Shown piece after piece: positions 36,801-45,800 of a stretch of 64,000 nt of DNA. Origin of the DNA: Asterias rubens (lineage: Eukaryota). The position numbers were made by a program, and so were the translations under genes. Under the pieces are notes generated by a model. The model was given only the letters and a program-made list of their open reading frames with translations, was not told the origin of the DNA and did no database searches. Within the stretch, counting starts at the first letter, position 1. Every line of letters begins with the position of its first letter. The DNA is taken from the NCBI RefSeq assembly GCF_902459465.1, contig NC_047066.1, positions 6,200,001-6,264,000 of the forward strand. Reading direction: 5' to 3'.

Positions 36801-39800
36801 CAGAACACTCTTCCGTAAATCTTCTTTTCCTTGCTTTCTGCCAGGTTCTCATTCTCTCTATCCCATTCATCAAGGATTTCAACCACAACTTCGTCCATGT
36901 CTAGGGCCTGCCCTTTTTTCTTTTTACCGCAGATCCATATCTTCTCGGAGGAACATTCACCCTTTGGAATCGCAAAGACGTACCCCGATGTCTCAAAATG
37001 AAACCAACATCTCTTGAAGGTGTCTGGATTACTCGAAACCAGTGACAAACCTTCCCAGCGCTTTTCTTCAGACAGCATCTCTAAGCCATTTTCCTGATCT
37101 TTCTCCTCATCTTCCACATCACAACAGCCAGCACCCTGGAGATTTGATCGGTCATAGTGGAAGTTCAATAACCTAATTGAGTTGTTCTTATTTTGCATGC
37201 GTATCTTCTGTTTCTCGCGAGAATTCGGCATCATCTTTATTTCAGGCAACTCTTCACGGTTAGGTTTTCTTTCCACTGCCCTCTCCTGAACGTCAACTTT
37301 TGCAATACTTTCTTGTTCATCATTTCCACCCGCTGCAGGCTGCTGTCCATCTGCACCTCCGCCTTGTCGTTGAGCTAACTCTTCGACGGCATTTCTATTT
37401 TGGATATTAACCTTGGCAATGCTTTCTGCTTCATTGCCTCCTCCAGGCTGACTTCCACCCATATTTTCTCCTTCTTGGTGTTGAACTGCCACCGTTCTGA
37501 AAGGCTTCTCCTGAATGGCAACCTTTGCGATACTTTCCAGACCATCTGGTCCCTGATGACCTGCATTCATGTCATCTTGCTGTTGAACTACATCTCCATC
37601 TAAAGGTTTCTTCTGAAAGGCAACCTTGACGATACTTTCCAGACCATCTTGTCCCTGATGACCTGCATTCATGTCTCTTTGTAGCTGACCAACATCTTCA
37701 TGCTCTCGTTCCTTCTGAATGGTAACCTTTGCTATACTTTCCAGCCCATCACCTTGTCCATGATAACCCACATCTCCATCCAAAGGTTTCTTCTGAAAGG
37801 CAACCTTGACGATACTTTCCAGACCGTCTGGTCCCTGACGACCTACATCCATGTCTCCTTGCAGTTGACCAACATCTTCATTCTCTCCTTTCTTCTGAAT
37901 GGCAATCTTTGCGATACTTTCTGGCCCATCACCTTGTCCACGATCACCCACATCTCCATCCGAAGGTTTCTTCTGTATGGTTACCTTTGCGATACTTTCC
38001 AGACTGTCTGGTCCCTGACGACCTACACCCATGTCTCCTTGCAGTTGACCAACATCTTCATTCTCTCCTTTCTTCTGAATGGCAACCTTTGCGATACTTT
38101 CTGGCCCATCACCTTGTCCATGATCACCCACATCTCCATCCGAAGGTTTCTTCTGTATGGTTACCTTTGCGATACTTTCCAGACCGTCTGGTCCCTGACG
38201 ACCTACATCCATGTCTCCTTGCAGTTGACCAACATCTTCATTCTCTCCTTTCTTTTGAATGGCAACCTTTGCGATACTTTCTGGCCCATCACCTTGTCCA
38301 TGATCACCCACTTCTCCATCCGAAGGTTTCTTCTGTATGGTTACCTTTGCGATACTCTCTTCAGTGGCTTTCTCCATCATTTCTCTTCTGTTGTCCTCTT
38401 CAACTTGTCTTTCCATCTCACGCAATATATATTCCTCATCGTCTTGGTAGACTTCTGAGTCATCCTCACGAGTGGCACCCTCATCGTCATCCTGTGTTTC
38501 CTGAGCTTCCTTCAAGGGTCCACCTAGTGTCGGAAATTCCTGCTCATCGTCGAGGTCGAATGGCAGTAATTGTTCTCGGTTCTGGTGAGAAGGTGAACTG
38601 TTGGTCATCTTCTTGGAGGGCTTGAAAGGAGTTGCTTTTGGATTCAACTTTCGATTTGCTGATTGGATCTCTCCCTCAATGGCTTTGACTGTAGTTCCCT
38701 GTTTGGGTCACAAAGAAACGAAGAAGAAATAAACTTTAGATAGGATTCCTTTGTACTACGCAAAAGTCAAAGTTTAAAAAAAATTGTTTAGTATGTCATT
38801 TTTATGATTGTGATCTAATAAGCTATTTTGTGAGAATCGAAATCTGAGCACCTTTATTGTGTTAATGAAATTACAAAGTTAAATTCTCAGTGAATTTCTC
38901 TTTCTAACTGCATGGGTTATAGTTAGCCATCAAGCCATATTACACAGTAGTTTTACACCAGTTCATCTGTCATGTTTGAGGCGGTAAATGTGAATCAAAA
39001 TCTGAGAAGTACCTTTATTGTGATAATGATGTTTAAAAATTACATTCTCAGTGAAATACTCTTTCTATAAACTGCACTGATTATCAATTAAATTCAATTC
39101 AATTTAATTTAATTCAATAGGGTTTATTAAAAATATATCAAAATAACAAGACAGAAGTTAAGAAGACTTAAATTGACATGTTAACATTCATTTTTGTTAA
39201 AAATTACACACACAAAAAACACAACGCATAGACGTAAAAAGGAGGAGAAAGTAGGCCTATTGCAAAAAATTTTACCCAACCTCCAAAAACCCCAAGTACA
39301 TTATAGTTCGCCATCAATTCATAATAATGCACAATAGTTTTTTTGCAACAGTTCATCTGTCTTTCTATGTTTGAGGTGGTTTACATGTAAGCAGAAAAAC
39401 CTGACTCACCAATGGATGCAGACTTTCGTTTTGTTCGCAGCATTTCAAAAAGTCCTGCCAAATAGTGGAACAGCGACCGACAGAGCACAAGGCAACTGGA
39501 TCACCAACAACACACAGCACCGACTGGGCACGAGTAAATGCGGTGTTGACCAGCTTCGGATCAGAGAGGAGTCTGTAGTCCAATTCTGAATCCACATCTT
39601 GACGACTGTTAATGACCCTGGTGCGGACTGTGCTGATGATAACTGCTCGAAATTGCTTTCCTGCATTGAGGTGTAAAAAGTCAAACTTCAGGTTCATATT
39701 TATTAAAAAAGAAGGCTGTATTAAACAGCGTTCAAACATTTCATCGGTTAATCCTAAATGAACATTGAAATCCATTTCCAAATTTCCTTCATGTGACTAA

Positions 39801-42800
39801 AAAAAGGTAAAATGTAAGCCTAAAAAATTTGCACAGATTATTTTTTGTATATATCTACATTTATATAGGATTACACTGTTCGAACGGTTAAAAAACCCAA
39901 AGGTAAACTTTCCCTTTAAAGAAAAAAAAAAATCAAAAATCTTTGTTTTTAAATATTTGGTTCACTTAAGGCATTACTTTATTATTCAGTATATAGATTA
40001 TATTAAGAATCCATTCCATATTTAAATTAAAATTAAAATTTGGAGTGGGTGATTGGGTCAAAAATGTTTTACCATTTTTAACATCGACTGTTCTGAATGG
40101 CCCAGAACTATTGGAGGTTGGTGAAAAAATGTATGGATTATTAATTTTTTGTTTGACTTGTTCAAACTATTATTGTTCTAGAGGTAAAAACAGGTTAAAC
40201 AATTATTAATCTATAACAGGTTAAACAATTATTAATCTATAACATGTAAAACAATTATTATTCTAGTCGTAAAACCGTTATTATTCTAGAGGTAAAAACA
40301 ATAATTAGTATAGATGTAAAACAGTTATTATTTTAAAGGTACAACAGTTATTTTTCTAGAGGTAAACCAATTATTTTTCTAGAGGTTAAACAATTATTAT
40401 CGCAGAGGTAAAACAAATTATTCTCATAGATGTAAACCAGTTATTATTTTAAAGGTAAAACAATTATTATTCTAGAGGTAAAACAACAATTCTAAAATGT
40501 GGAATCAATATTCATCTAGATTTGTTCCAGTGATTGGTTTCCATCAACAACATTTGTTTAATTCCCTTTGTATAACAAAAAGGGGAATGGGTTGATTTGA
40601 AATGGAAAAAACACAAGAATTACAAAAAAAGTTAGAAAAATCCTACCTTGGACATTATCCACAGTGTCGACCGTCACATTGTGAAATCCTTCCTTCCTCA
40701 GATAAGCTCGTATTAGATGCACCTGCAAAACAAGTGATTTGAGTTAATTGATTGATTGAGTTTTTTATTTATTTATTTCCTCAAAACCTCCAAAACTGGA
40801 AAAGATAAAAAGATTTATAAAAATTAAATCAAATATACAGTATAAGGGACAGGTTGAACAAAATAAAAACATTTTAGTGGGATTTGTACCTGCATATACC
40901 CATGATTGGGTTTTATGGGGTCTCTACTTGACTAGCACTGCTTTGTGGAGACCCCAACAACTTAAAGGCACTGGACACCTTGAGAAACTGTCAAATTCTC
41001 ACCTTGTGTATCCCAAAAATGCAACGAAGTTGCAAGAGAAAAATGAAAGAAAAAACACCCTTGTTGCACAAATTTATGTGCTTTCAGATGGCTAATAAAA
41101 AGCTTCAGGGCTGAAGTCTTTTAGTATTTGAGTGAGAAATCAACCTTGATATAACAGTTTAGAATCAGACTGGTGAAAACTTTTGGTTGTTTTCCCCCAA
41201 AGAAACCTATAAATGACCTCGGTCAGTTATGATTGTTTGCAGCACTTGCGCCATCAATTCACCCCCCACCCATGGATTTCAAAGACCTGCTTGAACGAAA
41301 ATGTCAATTCGTGAATTTGCTGAATATTTCATTTCAAATGTTTTCAATGAATAAGGAAATATGATTATAAAAAGCGTTTAATTGTGTAAGCAAAAAAATT
41401 TGAATACCCTTATCCAGCATTTTTCTTGGAGATTTGCAAAAACTCAGTTACGTAATCACTTTCAAAGCGTCATAGTTGGGAGCTCCAATTTGTAAAGCAG
41501 CTTTGTTGCAGCGTGGAGGTATAACAAAGCAAACTCGAAGCATTGTCCTTTGAGGGGGGGGCCTGATTTTTTAATCGATAATTATAAAAAATTCAGAAGT
41601 GTACACATATAAAAAATTACATTAAAATGGTGAACAAGTGCATTATAAACAAAAGTTAAAATACCATATCCGTTAAAAACATTCCGCCCAAGTAGCTGTT
41701 TAATGTACTTTCAAAAAAATACACAACTGTTCTTGATGTTAAGTTAGCTTAACCTTCATACTTTTTTGCCCCCTCACTTCTCATTGAAACACAATTACTG
41801 GACTTGACATTGTGATAAAACGCATCATACCTGCATAATGTAAGCAGCCAAAACAGCAACATTTTCTTGGAAGTCTCCCCATTCTGCAGTAAGCCATCCT
41901 TCCATCAGCAGTTTCACTTGTCTTACTACTTCATGAGTCTAAATGGATGTAAAAAATACAGAACAAGGCTTTAAAGACACTGGACACCTTTGGTAATATT
42001 ATCAAAGACCAATCTTCTAACTTGGTGTATCTCAACATTATGCACATAATAACAAACCTGTAAAAATATGAGCTCAATTGGATGTTGATAATAATGGAAG
42101 TAAAAAACACCCTTGTCATACGAAGTTGTGTGCTTTCGGATGCTTGATTTCAAGACCTCACGTGCGAGGTCTCAAAATCAATTCAAATATTTTACTGAGA
42201 AATTACTTCTTTCTCAAAAACTATGTTACTTCAGAGGGAGCTGTTACTCACAATGTTTTATACTATCAACATCTCTCCATTGTTTGTCACCAAGTACGTT
42301 TTTATGCCACCAACTATTGTGAGTAATTACCAATAGTGTCCTGTGCCTTTAAATCACTTCATGTTGGATGATATTTTGGATGCAAACTTCTTTTGATTAG
42401 ACTTATGCGGACATTTTAAAAGTTTTCTCATTTTTATTAACAACCTGTGAGTCTATACTCAGGCAATTTGCAGGGTTTATCACAGACCCGGCATACTATT
42501 GCTGTGTGATGTACACAAACTGGTCTTTAGAATGATGCAAGCCTGGCGCATATACAGCCATGTTTATCTAGCCGATGATAACACATTTTACCTTGAATGC
42601 AGCAAAATGAAGTATACAAACCTCATAGTTGTTGGCATAGGACATTCCCGAGTGGTATTCAACTCCCTTCACTACACAAAACGTCATTGGCTTGACATGT
42701 GGATGCTCCAGGTGTCTTATCCCGGCCTTCAGATTCTGCTTGTAAAACGTCTTGGAGGTGAAATCCAGAATCGACTGGCAGGTTCGGTAGTTTGACGTCA

Positions 42801-45800
42801 GGAACTTCTGCTTGCATTTCTTCGTCAGCAACAAACGCTGCAATAGAGAACTGTCCAAACCCGCATCGCGAACTGCCTTTGAGTAAACCTAAAAGACATT
42901 TTAATAAAGTGAACAGCATGAATGCATGTGACATTTAAGCAAAGGCGTAGTTTTAGGAAAAGTGCTCTTGATCATTCCAGATATTTATCATGAAATTCAC
43001 GAAAGTAGAACATTGCAGTTTTAGTTGCCATTTTACTAAAAAGGCTGGAATAAGTCCCAAGGTTCAACTTGCAAATTTTGTTCAAAGGGAACTTTGGGAT
43101 TTCATTCTACCCTTCTGGAATACTTTAAAAGAAAATAAGAGCTACACTCTGTTAATATTTCTCAGAAAAGAGCGTTCATCACATACTTTTCTTTATCTAA
43201 CATTCAATGATTCTGATTGTAGAAGCACACAGAGATATTACAATAGTTTTTCTTGTTTTGTTTTAATCAATCTGTCTGTTTATTGTTCTAAAATTTGTAG
43301 TGTTTATAAATCAAGTGTGGGATAATAAAGTTCTTATGTTTTCTTCTTTGTTTTTAGTTTGGTATTTCCAGTGATGAAAACCAAACTTACCTTTGGACTC
43401 ATTTGCATATGATCACCGGTCAACACAACGCATGTATCTTTGGTTGCCAAGGTCAATGGTATCAAGACTTCAGCTTCAAGGACCTGGCCCGCCTCGTCAA
43501 TGAAGATATGAGAGAAGTTTCCATGAAGGCCAGCCGAGACAAGATGCGTTGCCGTGGTAAGTGTCGTCACAACAACTTGGGCTGCTAGGATTTCTGTTTT
43601 ATCCGGAAGACGAATGTTGCCGTTGGCATCCTTGGGGACATACTCAAGGACGGTAGGGTGGATGGATTTTTTGTTGCGCATCGTTGCGTAAATCCGGATC
43701 ATGCGGAATGTTCCATTGTCTCTAAGGTACAAGTCAGCAGCACTGCAAAAATAAGAAGAAAGTCAATCATGGCTTCATATTTATCATCAGATTTTCTACC
43801 CTACAAAACTCTTAATGAACTGCATTCTATTTTTGGGTTGAATAAATTATCAGAGCTCAAATTTCTTGCCAACAAACCAATAAGACTGCAACCTTTACTT
43901 TACCAAAAATATTTTTTACTCAAATTTCACACCCAACGCTCCAAATTACACTATGGTTGTACCCACAAGTTAACTGAACTTACTAGTTATTTTTTATCAG
44001 AATTATTTAAAAACTTAAAAACTCATACCTGTTTGAGTGTGTGCAGATTAGAATCTTACACGACGGTCGTGGTTTTAGGATTTTGTTCACCGCCATCGCC
44101 ATTGTTGAGGTCTTTCCTGTTCCAAAGGGCCCATACATCAGGACTGGTCCAACACCAGGCATCGGTGGCGCTTCGCTACCGCCATGTTTACTGATTAAAT
44201 CAATGACTTTTTGTTGATGTGCGTTGATTTTCTCATCAGTGCCTACACCTGATGAAGGGAATGGAGGTAGCCTGAAAATGTGAATCAAGAAAATGTTCAG
44301 TTCTGGTTATTAAAAAGCAATGCCAAAAAATCCTTGTGAAAAATATTTGTGAAAGTTTCTGAACAGAAACCGCTCCCTCTGAAGTGAGGTAGTTTTCGAG
44401 AAAGAAGTAATTTTCCACGAATTTGATTTTGAGACCTCAGATTTAGAATTTGAGGTCTCGAAATCTGAAAGCACACGACTTTGTGTAACAAGGGTGGGTT
44501 TTTTTTTCATTATTATCTCGCAACTTTGACGACCAATTGAGCTCAAATTTTCACAGGTTTGTTATGTAATGCATATGTTGAGATCCACTGAGCGAGAAAA
44601 CTGGTATTTGACAATTACCAATAGTGTCAAGTGTCTTTAACTAATAGAGATACATCATCATAAACTTACATCTGTGGCCCTTCTCCCTCTGGAAACACTA
44701 AATCCATGTTCTGCATCTCATCTATGCCAAAGTGCTTGACACAAAAATGTTCTCGATTGAGCTGAAATTTGAGCTTAACATTACGCTCCACTCCATCCTC
44801 AAGTTGTAGGTCTGCGATACACTCCTTACTCAGCTTGATGAGTAGCACCTCCTCCTCTTTATCCCCCAATGTCTGGTTGGGAAGTATGGGAGCTTCATAA
44901 TGTGCCAACTGTTTCAATAAAGAAAAAATGCATTATTTATACCTCATTGACACAAAATCACCAGCCAAATCACCATAATCACCAGCTAGTGATGATTAAT
45001 TTGGATAGTACGGTTCTCCTGTATATTTTTATTATGCTTGTGCAATTTGCCATTTTTATATTGTATTTTTTTCATTTTCTTTGTGATTTGGTTTACAATA
45101 GAGTATTTCGTTGTTTTATTCTGTTGTTTGTCTGTTATAGTTGTGCTGGTCCCTTGTCCCTTTTTAAAATTGTTATTATGTGTAAACAAGGGTCCCCATT
45201 TAGTGGGCCTGTGTGCCTGTTCAGGGCTTCCCTTTTGCACCAATATAATTTTGTATGTATTTGTGCAATGAAGGTAATAAAATTATGAAAATTAAAATGA
45301 AGACCTAGATAGCTCAAACAGTGGAGCGTCGGTGTGGCAGGAGATTCTGTCCCTCCAGATTCTGTCCCCCCGTATGGCGAAGTGTGCAAACTTCTTCTGA
45401 GAACACACTCTTGTCATCCTCCTTCAGCCTATGTTAATTTCCCATCAAATGGGGAACAGAATCTCCGACGGACAGATTTCCCTGGGACACCAGCACATTA
45501 ATCCGGAGGTATAATTAGTTTTTGGCTCAGGTTTACATACAACTTTGATTTCCTAACAAACCTTATCAGAGTCGGTAAACTCGAGTAGCACACTCTGGAC
45601 ACTCTTGATGAAGATCTGACTAGCCATTGTGTCATCTATGAGAGACTCTTTGAGACTGACTGAAGCAAAAAAATATCCATCTTGAGCATATTCTGTACGG
45701 ACGCCCGGCAGCGCAGCCTGCAATGAAACCTTCAGTGTACCTGATGTTGCGAACCTTCAAGGAGAAAGGGAAAAGGTATTAGTAAATATTCTAGAAAAGT

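What the first reader, a model, noticed from the sequence alone, without database searches (positions are those of the whole stretch)
37283..38359. 12-copy higher-order ESIAKV repeat between helicase 1 and the RNB domain
Seen: a fixed ESI[AV]KVx[IF]Q head recurs 12 times. Spacers alternate 26 and 34 aa, forming a 60-aa dimer amplified three times almost identically (recent expansion). The last three units keep the head while their Gly/Gln spacers have diverged completely. Inference: retention of the hydrophobic, beta-strand-like head through spacer divergence suggests a selected multivalent short linear motif (scaffolding or condensate formation) in a roughly 360-aa disordered tether. I do not recognise it from known HELZ2 proteins.
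Basis: partly seen in the sequence, partly recalled or inferred. Interest (0 to 1): 0.72.

Follow-up and report, generated by a model that had tools for sequence, protein, structure and literature searches.

The report
Conserved repeat motif in HELZ2 linker
One of four HELZ2 (RNA helicase plus exonuclease) genes in this echinoderm genome, probably a starfish, carries an expressed run of 12 copies of a short peptide, ESIAKVxIQKK; the peptide has been kept by selection while the stretches between copies drift, which suggests a new docking motif with no known partner rather than junk repeat.

Summary
On the minus strand, window 38359-37283 encodes 12 heads, ESI[AV]K[VI]x[IFV]Q. They lie inside one 4.8-kb exon of a HELZ2-type gene, between helicase 1 with a PAM2-like motif and the OB_HELZ2/RNB nuclease. 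Units of 26 and 34 aa form a 180-nt dimer. Three dimer copies are 97-98% identical and a fourth is 86%. Units 9-12 keep the head but their spacers differ.

Spliced RNA contigs from three studies enter the array from both sides, and no listed joint skips it.

Selection on the head is supported in two ways. Head codons differ mostly at synonymous sites (pS about 0.65-0.70, pN 0.04-0.09). The only collinear relative found (P0001, 52% identical overall) has six ESIAKV[AD]IQ[KN][KR] heads with unlike 36-40-aa units.

The three paralogues in the same genome and the other echinoderm HELZ2 proteins examined lack the motif. It occurs nowhere else in the 417.6-Mb genome.

AlphaFold gives no confident fold and no docking onto the nuclease core.

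My reading is a lineage-restricted, selected, multivalent linear motif on an acidic disordered tether. No partner is known, and condensate formation was not tested. LC8 binding is rejected.

The scan had noted this same stretch before (s1-150540, the same first-reader note), not on other DNA.

The parts
33857..38697 (-). Large HELZ2 exon or open frame holding the PAM2-like motif, the repeat array, OB_HELZ2, CSD2 and RNB. The 5' exon edge at 38697 comes from spliced RNA contigs. The 3' edge was not determined; the frame's stop codon is at 33857-33859.
37283..38359 (-). The array: 12 units, each starting with ESI[AV]K[VI]x[IFV]Q. It covers 360 aa, ORF residues 97-456.
37820..38359 (-). Units 1-6: three 180-nt dimers (26-aa plus 34-aa units), 97.2-97.8% identical to each other. 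This is the recent amplification.
37640..37819 (-). Units 7-8: an older fourth dimer, about 86% identical to the young ones. The head of unit 7 reads ESIVKVAFQ.
37538..37639 (-). Unit 9, 34 aa, head ESIVKVAFQKK. It is a hybrid of the two spacer types.
37283..37537 (-). Units 10, 11 and the head of unit 12. The heads are intact (ESIAKVAIQEK, ESIAKVNIQNR, ESIAKVDVQER) and the spacers are unrelated to the others. The head of unit 11 differs from the common head mostly at synonymous sites.
38615..38647 (-). PAM2-like motif LNPKATPFKPS, directly after helicase 1. It is context for the array, not part of it.
38402..38428 (-). Conserved helix ILREMERQV (echinoderm consensus IL.ELRRQV). It marks the N-terminal edge of the variable linker in which the array sits.
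37160..37204 (-). Conserved IRMQ....IRLL element, modelled as a beta-hairpin with pLDDT 53-63. It marks the C-terminal edge of the variable linker.
36782..37048 (-). OB_HELZ2 domain (PF25049, E = 1.2e-15).
35255..36328 (-). RNB exoribonuclease domain (PF00773, E = 1.5e-68).
39409..39659 (-). Upstream exon with the end of helicase 1 (AAA_12). In RNA contigs it is spliced directly onto 38697.
26607..26849 (-). Piece of helicase 2 (AAA_11, E = 2.6e-19), downstream of the nuclease exon.

Best explanation
SHOWN:
- The array is a real, transcribed, in-frame tandem repeat. It sits in the variable acidic linker of one HELZ2 paralogue, between helicase 1 with its PAM2-like motif and the OB/RNB nuclease.
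- Its 9-11-residue head, E-S-I-A-K-V-x-I-Q-K-[KR], is under purifying selection at the protein level.
- The spacers keep only their composition (Gly, Gln, Asp and Glu rich, net acidic) and a weak LDG[DE]V remnant.
- The region has no confident predicted fold.

INFERRED:
- The array grows and shrinks by unequal recombination. The window has near-identical 180-nt dimers, while the relative has 37-aa units amplified separately. The C-terminal units look like the older ones shared by both species.
- Most likely the heads act as a multivalent short linear motif. That would give 6-12 identical docking sites on a flexible, negatively charged tether, each probably taking an extended conformation when bound. 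The effect would be avidity for a still unknown ligand, protein or RNA, next to the poly(A)-binding-protein docking site of a 3'-5' exonuclease.
- The partner and the cellular outcome, such as recruitment, clustering or granule targeting, are not established.
For: Reality and expression:
- Searches show the array.
- In one search, contigs of runs X1, X2 and X10 (three studies) join 38697|39409-39659|40646-40720|41829-41938|42622. They are therefore RNA.
- Contigs cover 36800-37631 and 38327-38697 and so run into the array from both sides. Unitigs lie inside the array, and no listed joint skips it.

Selection on the head:
- Over head codons 1-9, pS is 0.65 and pN 0.087 (ratio 0.13). Without the variable codon 7 the ratio is 0.06.
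- I counted at least 10 synonymous against 4 conservative nonsynonymous events where about 21% synonymous is expected. A rough binomial gives P = 7e-5.
- Alignable spacers give pN/pS of about 0.7-1.1.
- The spacers of units 10-12 cannot be aligned, yet their heads are intact.

Cross-species evidence:
- P0001 is collinear and 52% identical overall.
- It has 6 heads, [EK]SIAKV[AD]IQ[KN][KR], in units of 36-40 aa.
- The head consensus is identical at all 8 non-variable positions. That has a chance of about 0.005 at 52% background identity.

Specificity:
- The degenerate head pattern occurs 12 times in the 417.6-Mb genome, all in this array.
- The three paralogues lack it.

Disorder:
- AlphaFold pLDDT is about 30-40 across the array from a single sequence.
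- It is 26-36 for heads 11 and 12 in a model built with an alignment whose core is well folded (mean pLDDT 79.4 for the 801 residues).
- Net charge is -26 and Gly is 16%.

Context:
- The same linker carries a PAM2-like motif that is conserved in paralogues and orthologues.
Against: - No partner was identified, and no known motif class fits.
- Cross-species support rests on one relative of unknown species, available as protein only. Across-species synonymous change could not be measured.
- The within-array codon comparisons use few sites and non-independent unit pairs. A direct head-versus-spacer Fisher test on two independent pairs is not significant (P = 0.20).
- Gene conversion between units could inflate apparent head conservation, though it would not produce the synonymous differences seen.
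- The motif is absent from three paralogues and from the other echinoderm HELZ2 proteins I examined. HELZ2 function in general therefore does not need it.
Confidence: 0.5

Rival explanations
1. Nearly neutral coding minisatellite. The array is a tolerated expansion in a linker whose length is free to vary. The head looks conserved only because units are young or are homogenised by gene conversion.
For: - Linker length varies from 71-74 aa in three short-linker echinoderm sequences (apparently brittle-star-type) to 473 aa here.
- Units 1-6 are 97-98% identical, so they are recent.
- The motif is absent from paralogues and from more distant orthologues.
- The head-versus-spacer contrast within alignable units is not significant.
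Against: - Head codons differ mostly at synonymous sites. This is not expected from recency or from conversion.
- Units 10-12 have lost all spacer similarity but keep the head.
- A relative that is only 52% identical overall keeps the head exactly, with a different unit organisation.
Confidence: 0.17
2. Physical or self-associating element. The alternation of small basic, hydrophobic, beta-prone heads with acidic Gly/Gln spacers makes a blocky polyampholyte. It acts by itself in one of three ways. It could be an entropic spacer, an acidic nucleic-acid mimic that tunes RNA access to the nuclease, or a source of head-to-head beta contacts that drive clustering or condensates. No dedicated partner is needed.
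For: - Heads carry +2 and spacers -3 to -5; the net charge is -26.
- Every head is drawn as a strand in the single-sequence model.
- The linkers of paralogues are also acidic.
Against: - The strand model has pLDDT of 30-40, so it carries no weight.
- Invariant polar residues (E1, S2, K5, Q9) argue for specific recognition rather than bulk charge or beta propensity.
- Paralogues manage with acidic linkers that have no heads.
Confidence: 0.2
3. Cis-regulatory docking. The heads bind the protein's own nuclease or helicase modules and gate RNA entry, as an autoinhibitory pseudo-substrate or strand addition.
For: - The heads loosely resemble the conserved strands of the IRMQ...IRLL hairpin that precedes the OB domain. 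This is my own inspection only.
Against: - In the alignment-based model of ORF residues 400-1200, heads 11 and 12 stay unstructured (pLDDT 26-36) and are not packed on the well-modelled core.
- That test was weak: only two diverged heads were included, and the alignment is shallow there.
Confidence: 0.07
4. The heads are LC8 (dynein light chain) binding sites. This would be a multivalent array like those of ASCIZ or Nup159, which bind as beta-strands.
For: - The sequence reads K-V-[TA]-I-Q-K, with Gln preceded by Ile.
- The motif is multivalent and sits in a disordered region, as in known LC8 clients. That comparison comes from my own knowledge plus PMC6607443 and PMC10046861.
Against: - The LC8 anchor needs mid-sized uncharged residues at -1 and +1, both buried.
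- According to PMC6607443, a charged residue there gives a 'poor anchor' that does not bind.
- Here +1 is Lys in 9 of 12 heads and Glu or Asn in the rest. Position +2 is Lys or Arg in 11 of 12, not the preferred Pro, Asp or Glu.
Confidence: 0.03

Closest known systems
HELZ2 (helicase with zinc finger 2; interferon-regulated 3'-5' exoribonuclease, PMC10516660)
   Same: The host gene has the defining layout: a UPF1-like helicase, then OB_HELZ2 plus RNB, then a second UPF1-like helicase. The named best hits are echinoderm HELZ2 proteins.
   Different: The ESIAKV array is not a HELZ2 feature. It is missing from the three paralogues in this genome and from the other echinoderm HELZ2 sequences I examined. 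No protein other than P0001 matched the array in the library-wide searches. The human HELZ2 paper contains none of the words repeat, linker, disordered or PAM2.
Tandem short-linear-motif arrays in disordered regions, such as the LC8 TQT sites of ASCIZ (PMC10046861) and the W-motifs of GW182/TNRC6 (own knowledge)
   Same: Several copies of a short conserved peptide are separated by variable, flexible spacers. Copy number differs between species. The array lies next to another docking motif (PAM2), as in GW182-type proteins.
   Different: The sequence fits none of these motif classes, and the LC8 anchor test failed. Part of the array is a very recent DNA-level amplification of 180-nt units, not a set of independently evolved sites.
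Coding minisatellites and higher-order tandem repeats in rapidly evolving proteins
   Same: There is a 180-nt higher-order unit with 97-98% identical copies and older, diverged units at one edge.
   Different: A sub-segment, the head, shows purifying selection and survives across a 52%-identity divergence. A plain minisatellite is not expected to show this.

Membership tests
HELZ2 | RNB exoribonuclease domain preceded by the HELZ2-type OB fold | tested here: met
   PF00773 at E = 1.5e-68 (ORF residues 774-1131) and PF25049 at E = 1.2e-15 (residues 534-622). The alignment-based model of residues 400-1200 has mean pLDDT 79.4, with 392 of 801 residues at 90 or more.
HELZ2 | Two UPF1-like (AAA_11/AAA_12) helicase cores flanking the nuclease | tested here: met
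   Upstream: AAA_11 at 43334-43732 and AAA_12 at 39365-39781. Downstream: AAA_11 at 26607-26849. RNA contigs splice the upstream exons onto the big exon. Full-length exon structure and catalytic residues were not examined.
Short linear motif (SLiM) array | Short peptide conserved more strongly than its flanks | tested here: met
   Within the array. Across species. Only one relative was available.
Short linear motif (SLiM) array | Located in an intrinsically disordered region | tested here: met
   By proxy only: pLDDT of 26-40 and composition plus the charge-hydropathy plot. There are no experimental data.
Short linear motif (SLiM) array | A defined binding partner or modifying enzyme | not testable with these tools
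   No candidate partner emerged. Pfam, PDB sequences and the Atlas give nothing for the repeat.
LC8-binding TQT motif | Anchor [T/V/I]-Q-[T/V] with an uncharged, buried +1 residue | tested here: not met
   The heads read I-Q-K (or I-Q-E, I-Q-N, V-Q-E). The rule comes from PMC6607443.
Any curated Pfam repeat or domain | Profile match above the gathering score | tested here: not met
   The best match is PDGLE at E = 0.067 and 13.5 bits, against a cut-off of 27.
Higher-order tandem repeat (coding minisatellite) | Head-to-tail DNA copies with a compound period | tested here: met
   TRF finds period 180, 4.3 copies and 94% matches, plus a period of 102.

The most novel reading that the evidence does not exclude
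ESIAKVxIQK[KR] is a previously undescribed class of multivalent docking motif. It would have evolved in one sea-star HELZ2 paralogue to recruit several copies of a partner, or to form reversible head-to-head assemblies. The effect would be to cluster a PABP-tethered antiviral or anti-retroelement exonuclease on poly(A) RNPs, with array length tuned by ongoing repeat expansion.
Probability: 0.3. Interest if true: 0.6.

Novelty: new variant of a known kind. Interest (0 to 1): 0.4.

Why it matters
HELZ2 is an interferon-linked RNA-degrading helicase. How it is targeted to its substrates is poorly understood, and invertebrate genomes carry several copies of it. Here one paralogue has added a selected, expandable peptide array next to a poly(A)-binding-protein docking site. 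If the heads bind something specific, this is a natural experiment in how an RNA-decay enzyme gains a new recruitment module and tunes its valency by repeat expansion. A synthesisable 11-residue peptide would give direct access to the partner. If no specific binding is found, it is still a clean example of purifying selection acting on a sub-segment of a coding minisatellite.

Tried and rejected
1. LC8/TQT motif. Rejected because of the charged +1 residue.

2. Docking of heads onto the protein's own OB/RNB core. The alignment-based AlphaFold model leaves heads 11 and 12 at pLDDT 26-36. This gives no support but is a weak test.

3. A folded repeat domain such as a beta-solenoid. The single-sequence AlphaFold model draws a strand meander, but at mean pLDDT 37.7 it carries no weight.

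4. Known families. Nothing meaningful came from Pfam at E up to 10, PDB sequences at E up to 10, or the ESM Atlas, where the best score was 0.79, in the noise range.

5. More relatives.
- Full HMMER against 1.84 billion representatives gave only P0001 and P0121.
- P0121 is an unrelated protein with a 36-aa repeat. I judge the match (26% identity) to be a repeat-on-repeat chance hit.
- A word search over the array region found only P0001.
- A search with a 520-aa fragment found nothing.
- A degenerate head pattern in the JGI metagenome contigs found nothing.
- DNA for the P0001 contig could not be fetched, so there is no cross-species codon test.

6. A single-copy ancestral head in other echinoderm HELZ2 linkers. 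By eye, 'ELKKIDVVTE' and similar look alike, but MAFFT does not align them to the head. Left as unproven.

7. Motif classes checked from my own memory of the consensus, not with a tool:
- Class-1b nuclear export signal: fits only units preceded by Leu, and that position is Pro in other units and in P0001.
- IQ calmodulin motif: the [RK]-G positions do not fit.
- SUMO-interaction motif: no hydrophobic triplet.
- KFERQ-like motif: no fit.
- Neuropeptide-precursor-like layout (conserved peptide, dibasic site, acidic spacer): implausible inside a cytoplasmic helicase.

8. Literature. There are no papers on HELZ2 in starfish. A wider echinoderm query listed no paper containing HELZ2 among the 15 shown of 6,425.

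9. Complex prediction was not used, because no partner is likely enough to justify a job.

10. Copy-number polymorphism could not be read from the data. Only assembled contigs were available, and they break inside the repeat.
Full report
WHAT IS THERE

The finding lies on the minus strand, inside one long open frame (33857-38647, 1596 codons). Pfam finds an OB_HELZ2 domain at ORF residues 534-622 and an RNB exonuclease domain at residues 774-1131. Helicase pieces lie upstream: AAA_11 at 43334-43732 and AAA_12 at 39365-39781. A second AAA_11 piece lies downstream at 26607-26849. The host gene therefore has the HELZ2 layout: helicase, nuclease, helicase.

The best named database relatives are echinoderm HELZ2 proteins from sea urchin, brittle star and sea cucumber. 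The genome is 417.6 Mb in 150 contigs. I did not verify the species.

THE REPEAT

A regex on the translation finds exactly 12 heads, ESI[AV]K[VI].

- Unit lengths, head included, are 26, 34, 26, 34, 26, 34, 26, 34, 34, 37 and 38 aa, followed by a tail.
The true spacers after an 11-aa head are 15 and 23 aa.
- TRF reports a 180-nt period with 4.3 copies and 94% matches.
- Dimers 1-3 are 97.2-97.8% identical. Dimer 4 is about 86% identical to them.
- Units 10-12 keep the head but have spacers that cannot be aligned with the others.
- Across the 12 heads, positions 1, 2, 3, 5 and 9 (E, S, I, K, Q) are invariant.
- Positions 4, 6 and 8 vary only conservatively (A/V, V/I, I/F/V). Position 7 is free.

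IS IT IN THE MESSAGE?

I laid contigs of four public runs on 36800-42700. In runs X1, X2 and X10, from three studies, single contigs join 38327-38697, 39409-39659, 40646-40720 (X1 and X10), 41829-41938 and 42622 onward. These contigs are therefore spliced RNA, and the 5' edge of the big exon is at 38697.

- Long contigs (6.8-7.4 kb) cover 36800-37631, which includes units 9-12.
- The spliced contigs cover 38327-38697, which includes head 1.
- Short unitigs lie inside the array.
- The contigs break in the near-identical dimers, as short-read assemblies do.
- No joint that skips the array is among those listed.

The array is therefore present in mRNA. Copy number and its polymorphism cannot be read from such contigs.

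IS THE HEAD SELECTED?

Within the array:
- Comparing units of distinct lineages (1, 2, 7, 8, 10, 11, 12) over head codons 1-9 gives pS 0.65 and pN 0.087, a ratio of 0.13.
- Leaving out the free codon 7 gives pS 0.70 and pN 0.043, a ratio of 0.06.
- Head 11 differs from the common head at 5-8 synonymous sites and, apart from the free position 7, keeps its amino acids.
- A hand count gives at least 10 synonymous and 4 conservative nonsynonymous events. About 21% synonymous would be expected under neutrality, which gives a rough P of 7e-5.
- Alignable spacers give pN/pS of about 0.7-1.1.

Caveats on the within-array evidence: the sites are few and the unit pairs are not independent. A Fisher test of head against spacer on two independent unit pairs is not significant (P = 0.20).

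Across species:
- P0001 is a 1490-aa open frame from a 22.8-kb ENA contig that also carries AAA_11 and AAA_12 pieces upstream.
- It is collinear with the window's frame and 52% identical over 1396 aa.
- It has six heads, [EK]SIAKV[AD]IQ[KN][KR], in units of 37, 37, 37, 40 and 36 aa plus a tail.
- Its spacers share with the window only composition and an LDG[DE]V remnant after the head.
- The C-terminal heads correspond between the two species: ...IQNR in both, and ...KVD[IV]Q in both.
- The amplified units differ: a 60-aa dimer here and a 37-aa monomer there.

The array therefore predates the split of the two lineages, and each lineage has re-amplified it separately. P0001 is closer to the window gene than the window's own paralogues are, so it is the orthologue or co-orthologue.

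HOW WIDESPREAD IS IT?

- The genome has three more HELZ2 paralogues on contig C6, at 48, 45 and 44% identity.
- Their linkers carry the PAM2-like motif, the IL.ELRRQV-type helix and acidic stretches, but no ESIAKV.
- P0002, at 43%, turned out to be the counterpart of one of these paralogues.
- The other echinoderm HELZ2 sequences I examined lack the motif.
- The linker between the conserved helix and the conserved [IF]RMV...L element ranges from 71 to 473 aa.
- A degenerate DNA pattern for the head hits 12 places in the whole genome, all in this array. The alternative serine-codon version hits none.
- Full HMMER against 1.84 billion representative proteins finds only P0001, plus one chance repeat-on-repeat hit, P0121.
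- Two word-based searches and one metagenome pattern scan add nothing.

STRUCTURE

- The array alone, folded without an alignment, gives mean pLDDT 37.7. Every head is drawn as a strand, but at that confidence the model carries no weight.
- With a 45-sequence alignment (A1), ORF residues 400-1200 fold well: mean pLDDT is 79.4 and 392 residues are at 90 or more.
- In that model heads 11 and 12 stay at pLDDT 26-36 and are not packed on the core.
- The IRMQ...IRLL element forms a hairpin at pLDDT 53-63.
- The array has net charge -26 (heads about +2, spacers -3 to -5), 16% Gly, no Cys and four aromatic residues.
- It lies on the disordered side of the charge-hydropathy boundary.

INTERPRETATION

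Shown:
- The array is real, expressed, in frame and restricted to one lineage.
- Its head is held by purifying selection while its spacers drift.
- It lies in a region predicted to be disordered, next to a PAM2-like motif.

Inferred:
- The heads are a multivalent linear docking motif on an acidic flexible tether. I favour this because invariant polar residues (E, S, K, Q) suggest specific recognition rather than bulk charge or strand propensity.
- This linker already serves as a platform for short motifs.
- I cannot name the ligand.

Rivals:
- A nearly neutral minisatellite. The synonymous pattern and the cross-species retention count against it.
- A self-acting polyampholyte or self-associating element. 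This was not tested.
- Docking in cis on the protein's own core. The model gives no support.
- LC8 binding. Rejected, because the anchor would carry a charged residue at the buried +1 position, which PMC6607443 reports as non-binding.

COMPARISON WITH WHAT IS KNOWN

The gene is a HELZ2 family member. The array is not a known HELZ2 feature, and Pfam, PDB sequences and the Atlas give nothing for it. The human HELZ2 paper contains none of the words repeat, linker, disordered or PAM2.

In kind, the array resembles other tandem arrays of short motifs in disordered regions. It differs in that part of it is a very young DNA-level amplification.

I rate it a new variant of a known kind, of moderate interest. 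The selection signal is the notable part, and the missing partner is the weak part.

Noticed in passing
window 38615-38647 (-): A PAM2-like motif, LNPKATPFKPS, lies directly after helicase 1. The same LNP.A..F.P pattern is present in two of the three paralogues of this genome and in several echinoderm HELZ2 sequences. PABP docking may therefore be a general trait of echinoderm HELZ2.
   Followed up: partly
window 38525-38557 (-): An [DE][EF][FY]P.L motif (here EQEFPTL) recurs at the same place in P0001-P0008 and in paralogue L003 as DEFPALL, EEYPALP, DEFPELP and similar.
   Followed up: no
window 37160-37204 (-): The conserved IRMQ....IRLL element ([IF]RMV....[ILV]L in other echinoderms) just before the OB domain is modelled as a beta-hairpin at moderate confidence. 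Its role is unknown.
   Followed up: partly
G000:C6:22122722-22124761, C6:22163802-22165808, C6:367792-369708: There are three further HELZ2 paralogues in the genome. Two of them lie only about 41 kb apart. None carries the ESIAKV array.
   Followed up: partly
window 40937-42512: The intronic stretches between the helicase-1 exons at 40646-40720, 41829-41938 and 42622 onward reach summed RNA-contig depths of 1e4 to 4e5, with many irregular joints. This looks like an abundant interspersed repeat family rather than part of this gene's transcript.
   Followed up: no
window 37906, 37941, 38255, 38312: RNA unitigs inside the array differ from the assembly at these places in some runs. This could be sequence polymorphism or a dimer variant in other individuals. 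It cannot be resolved from contigs.
   Followed up: no
window 37700-38458 (+) and 37909-38625 (+): Two long plus-strand ORFs (252 and 238 aa) run antisense through the array. They are most likely stop-free artefacts of the repeat, not genes.
   Followed up: no
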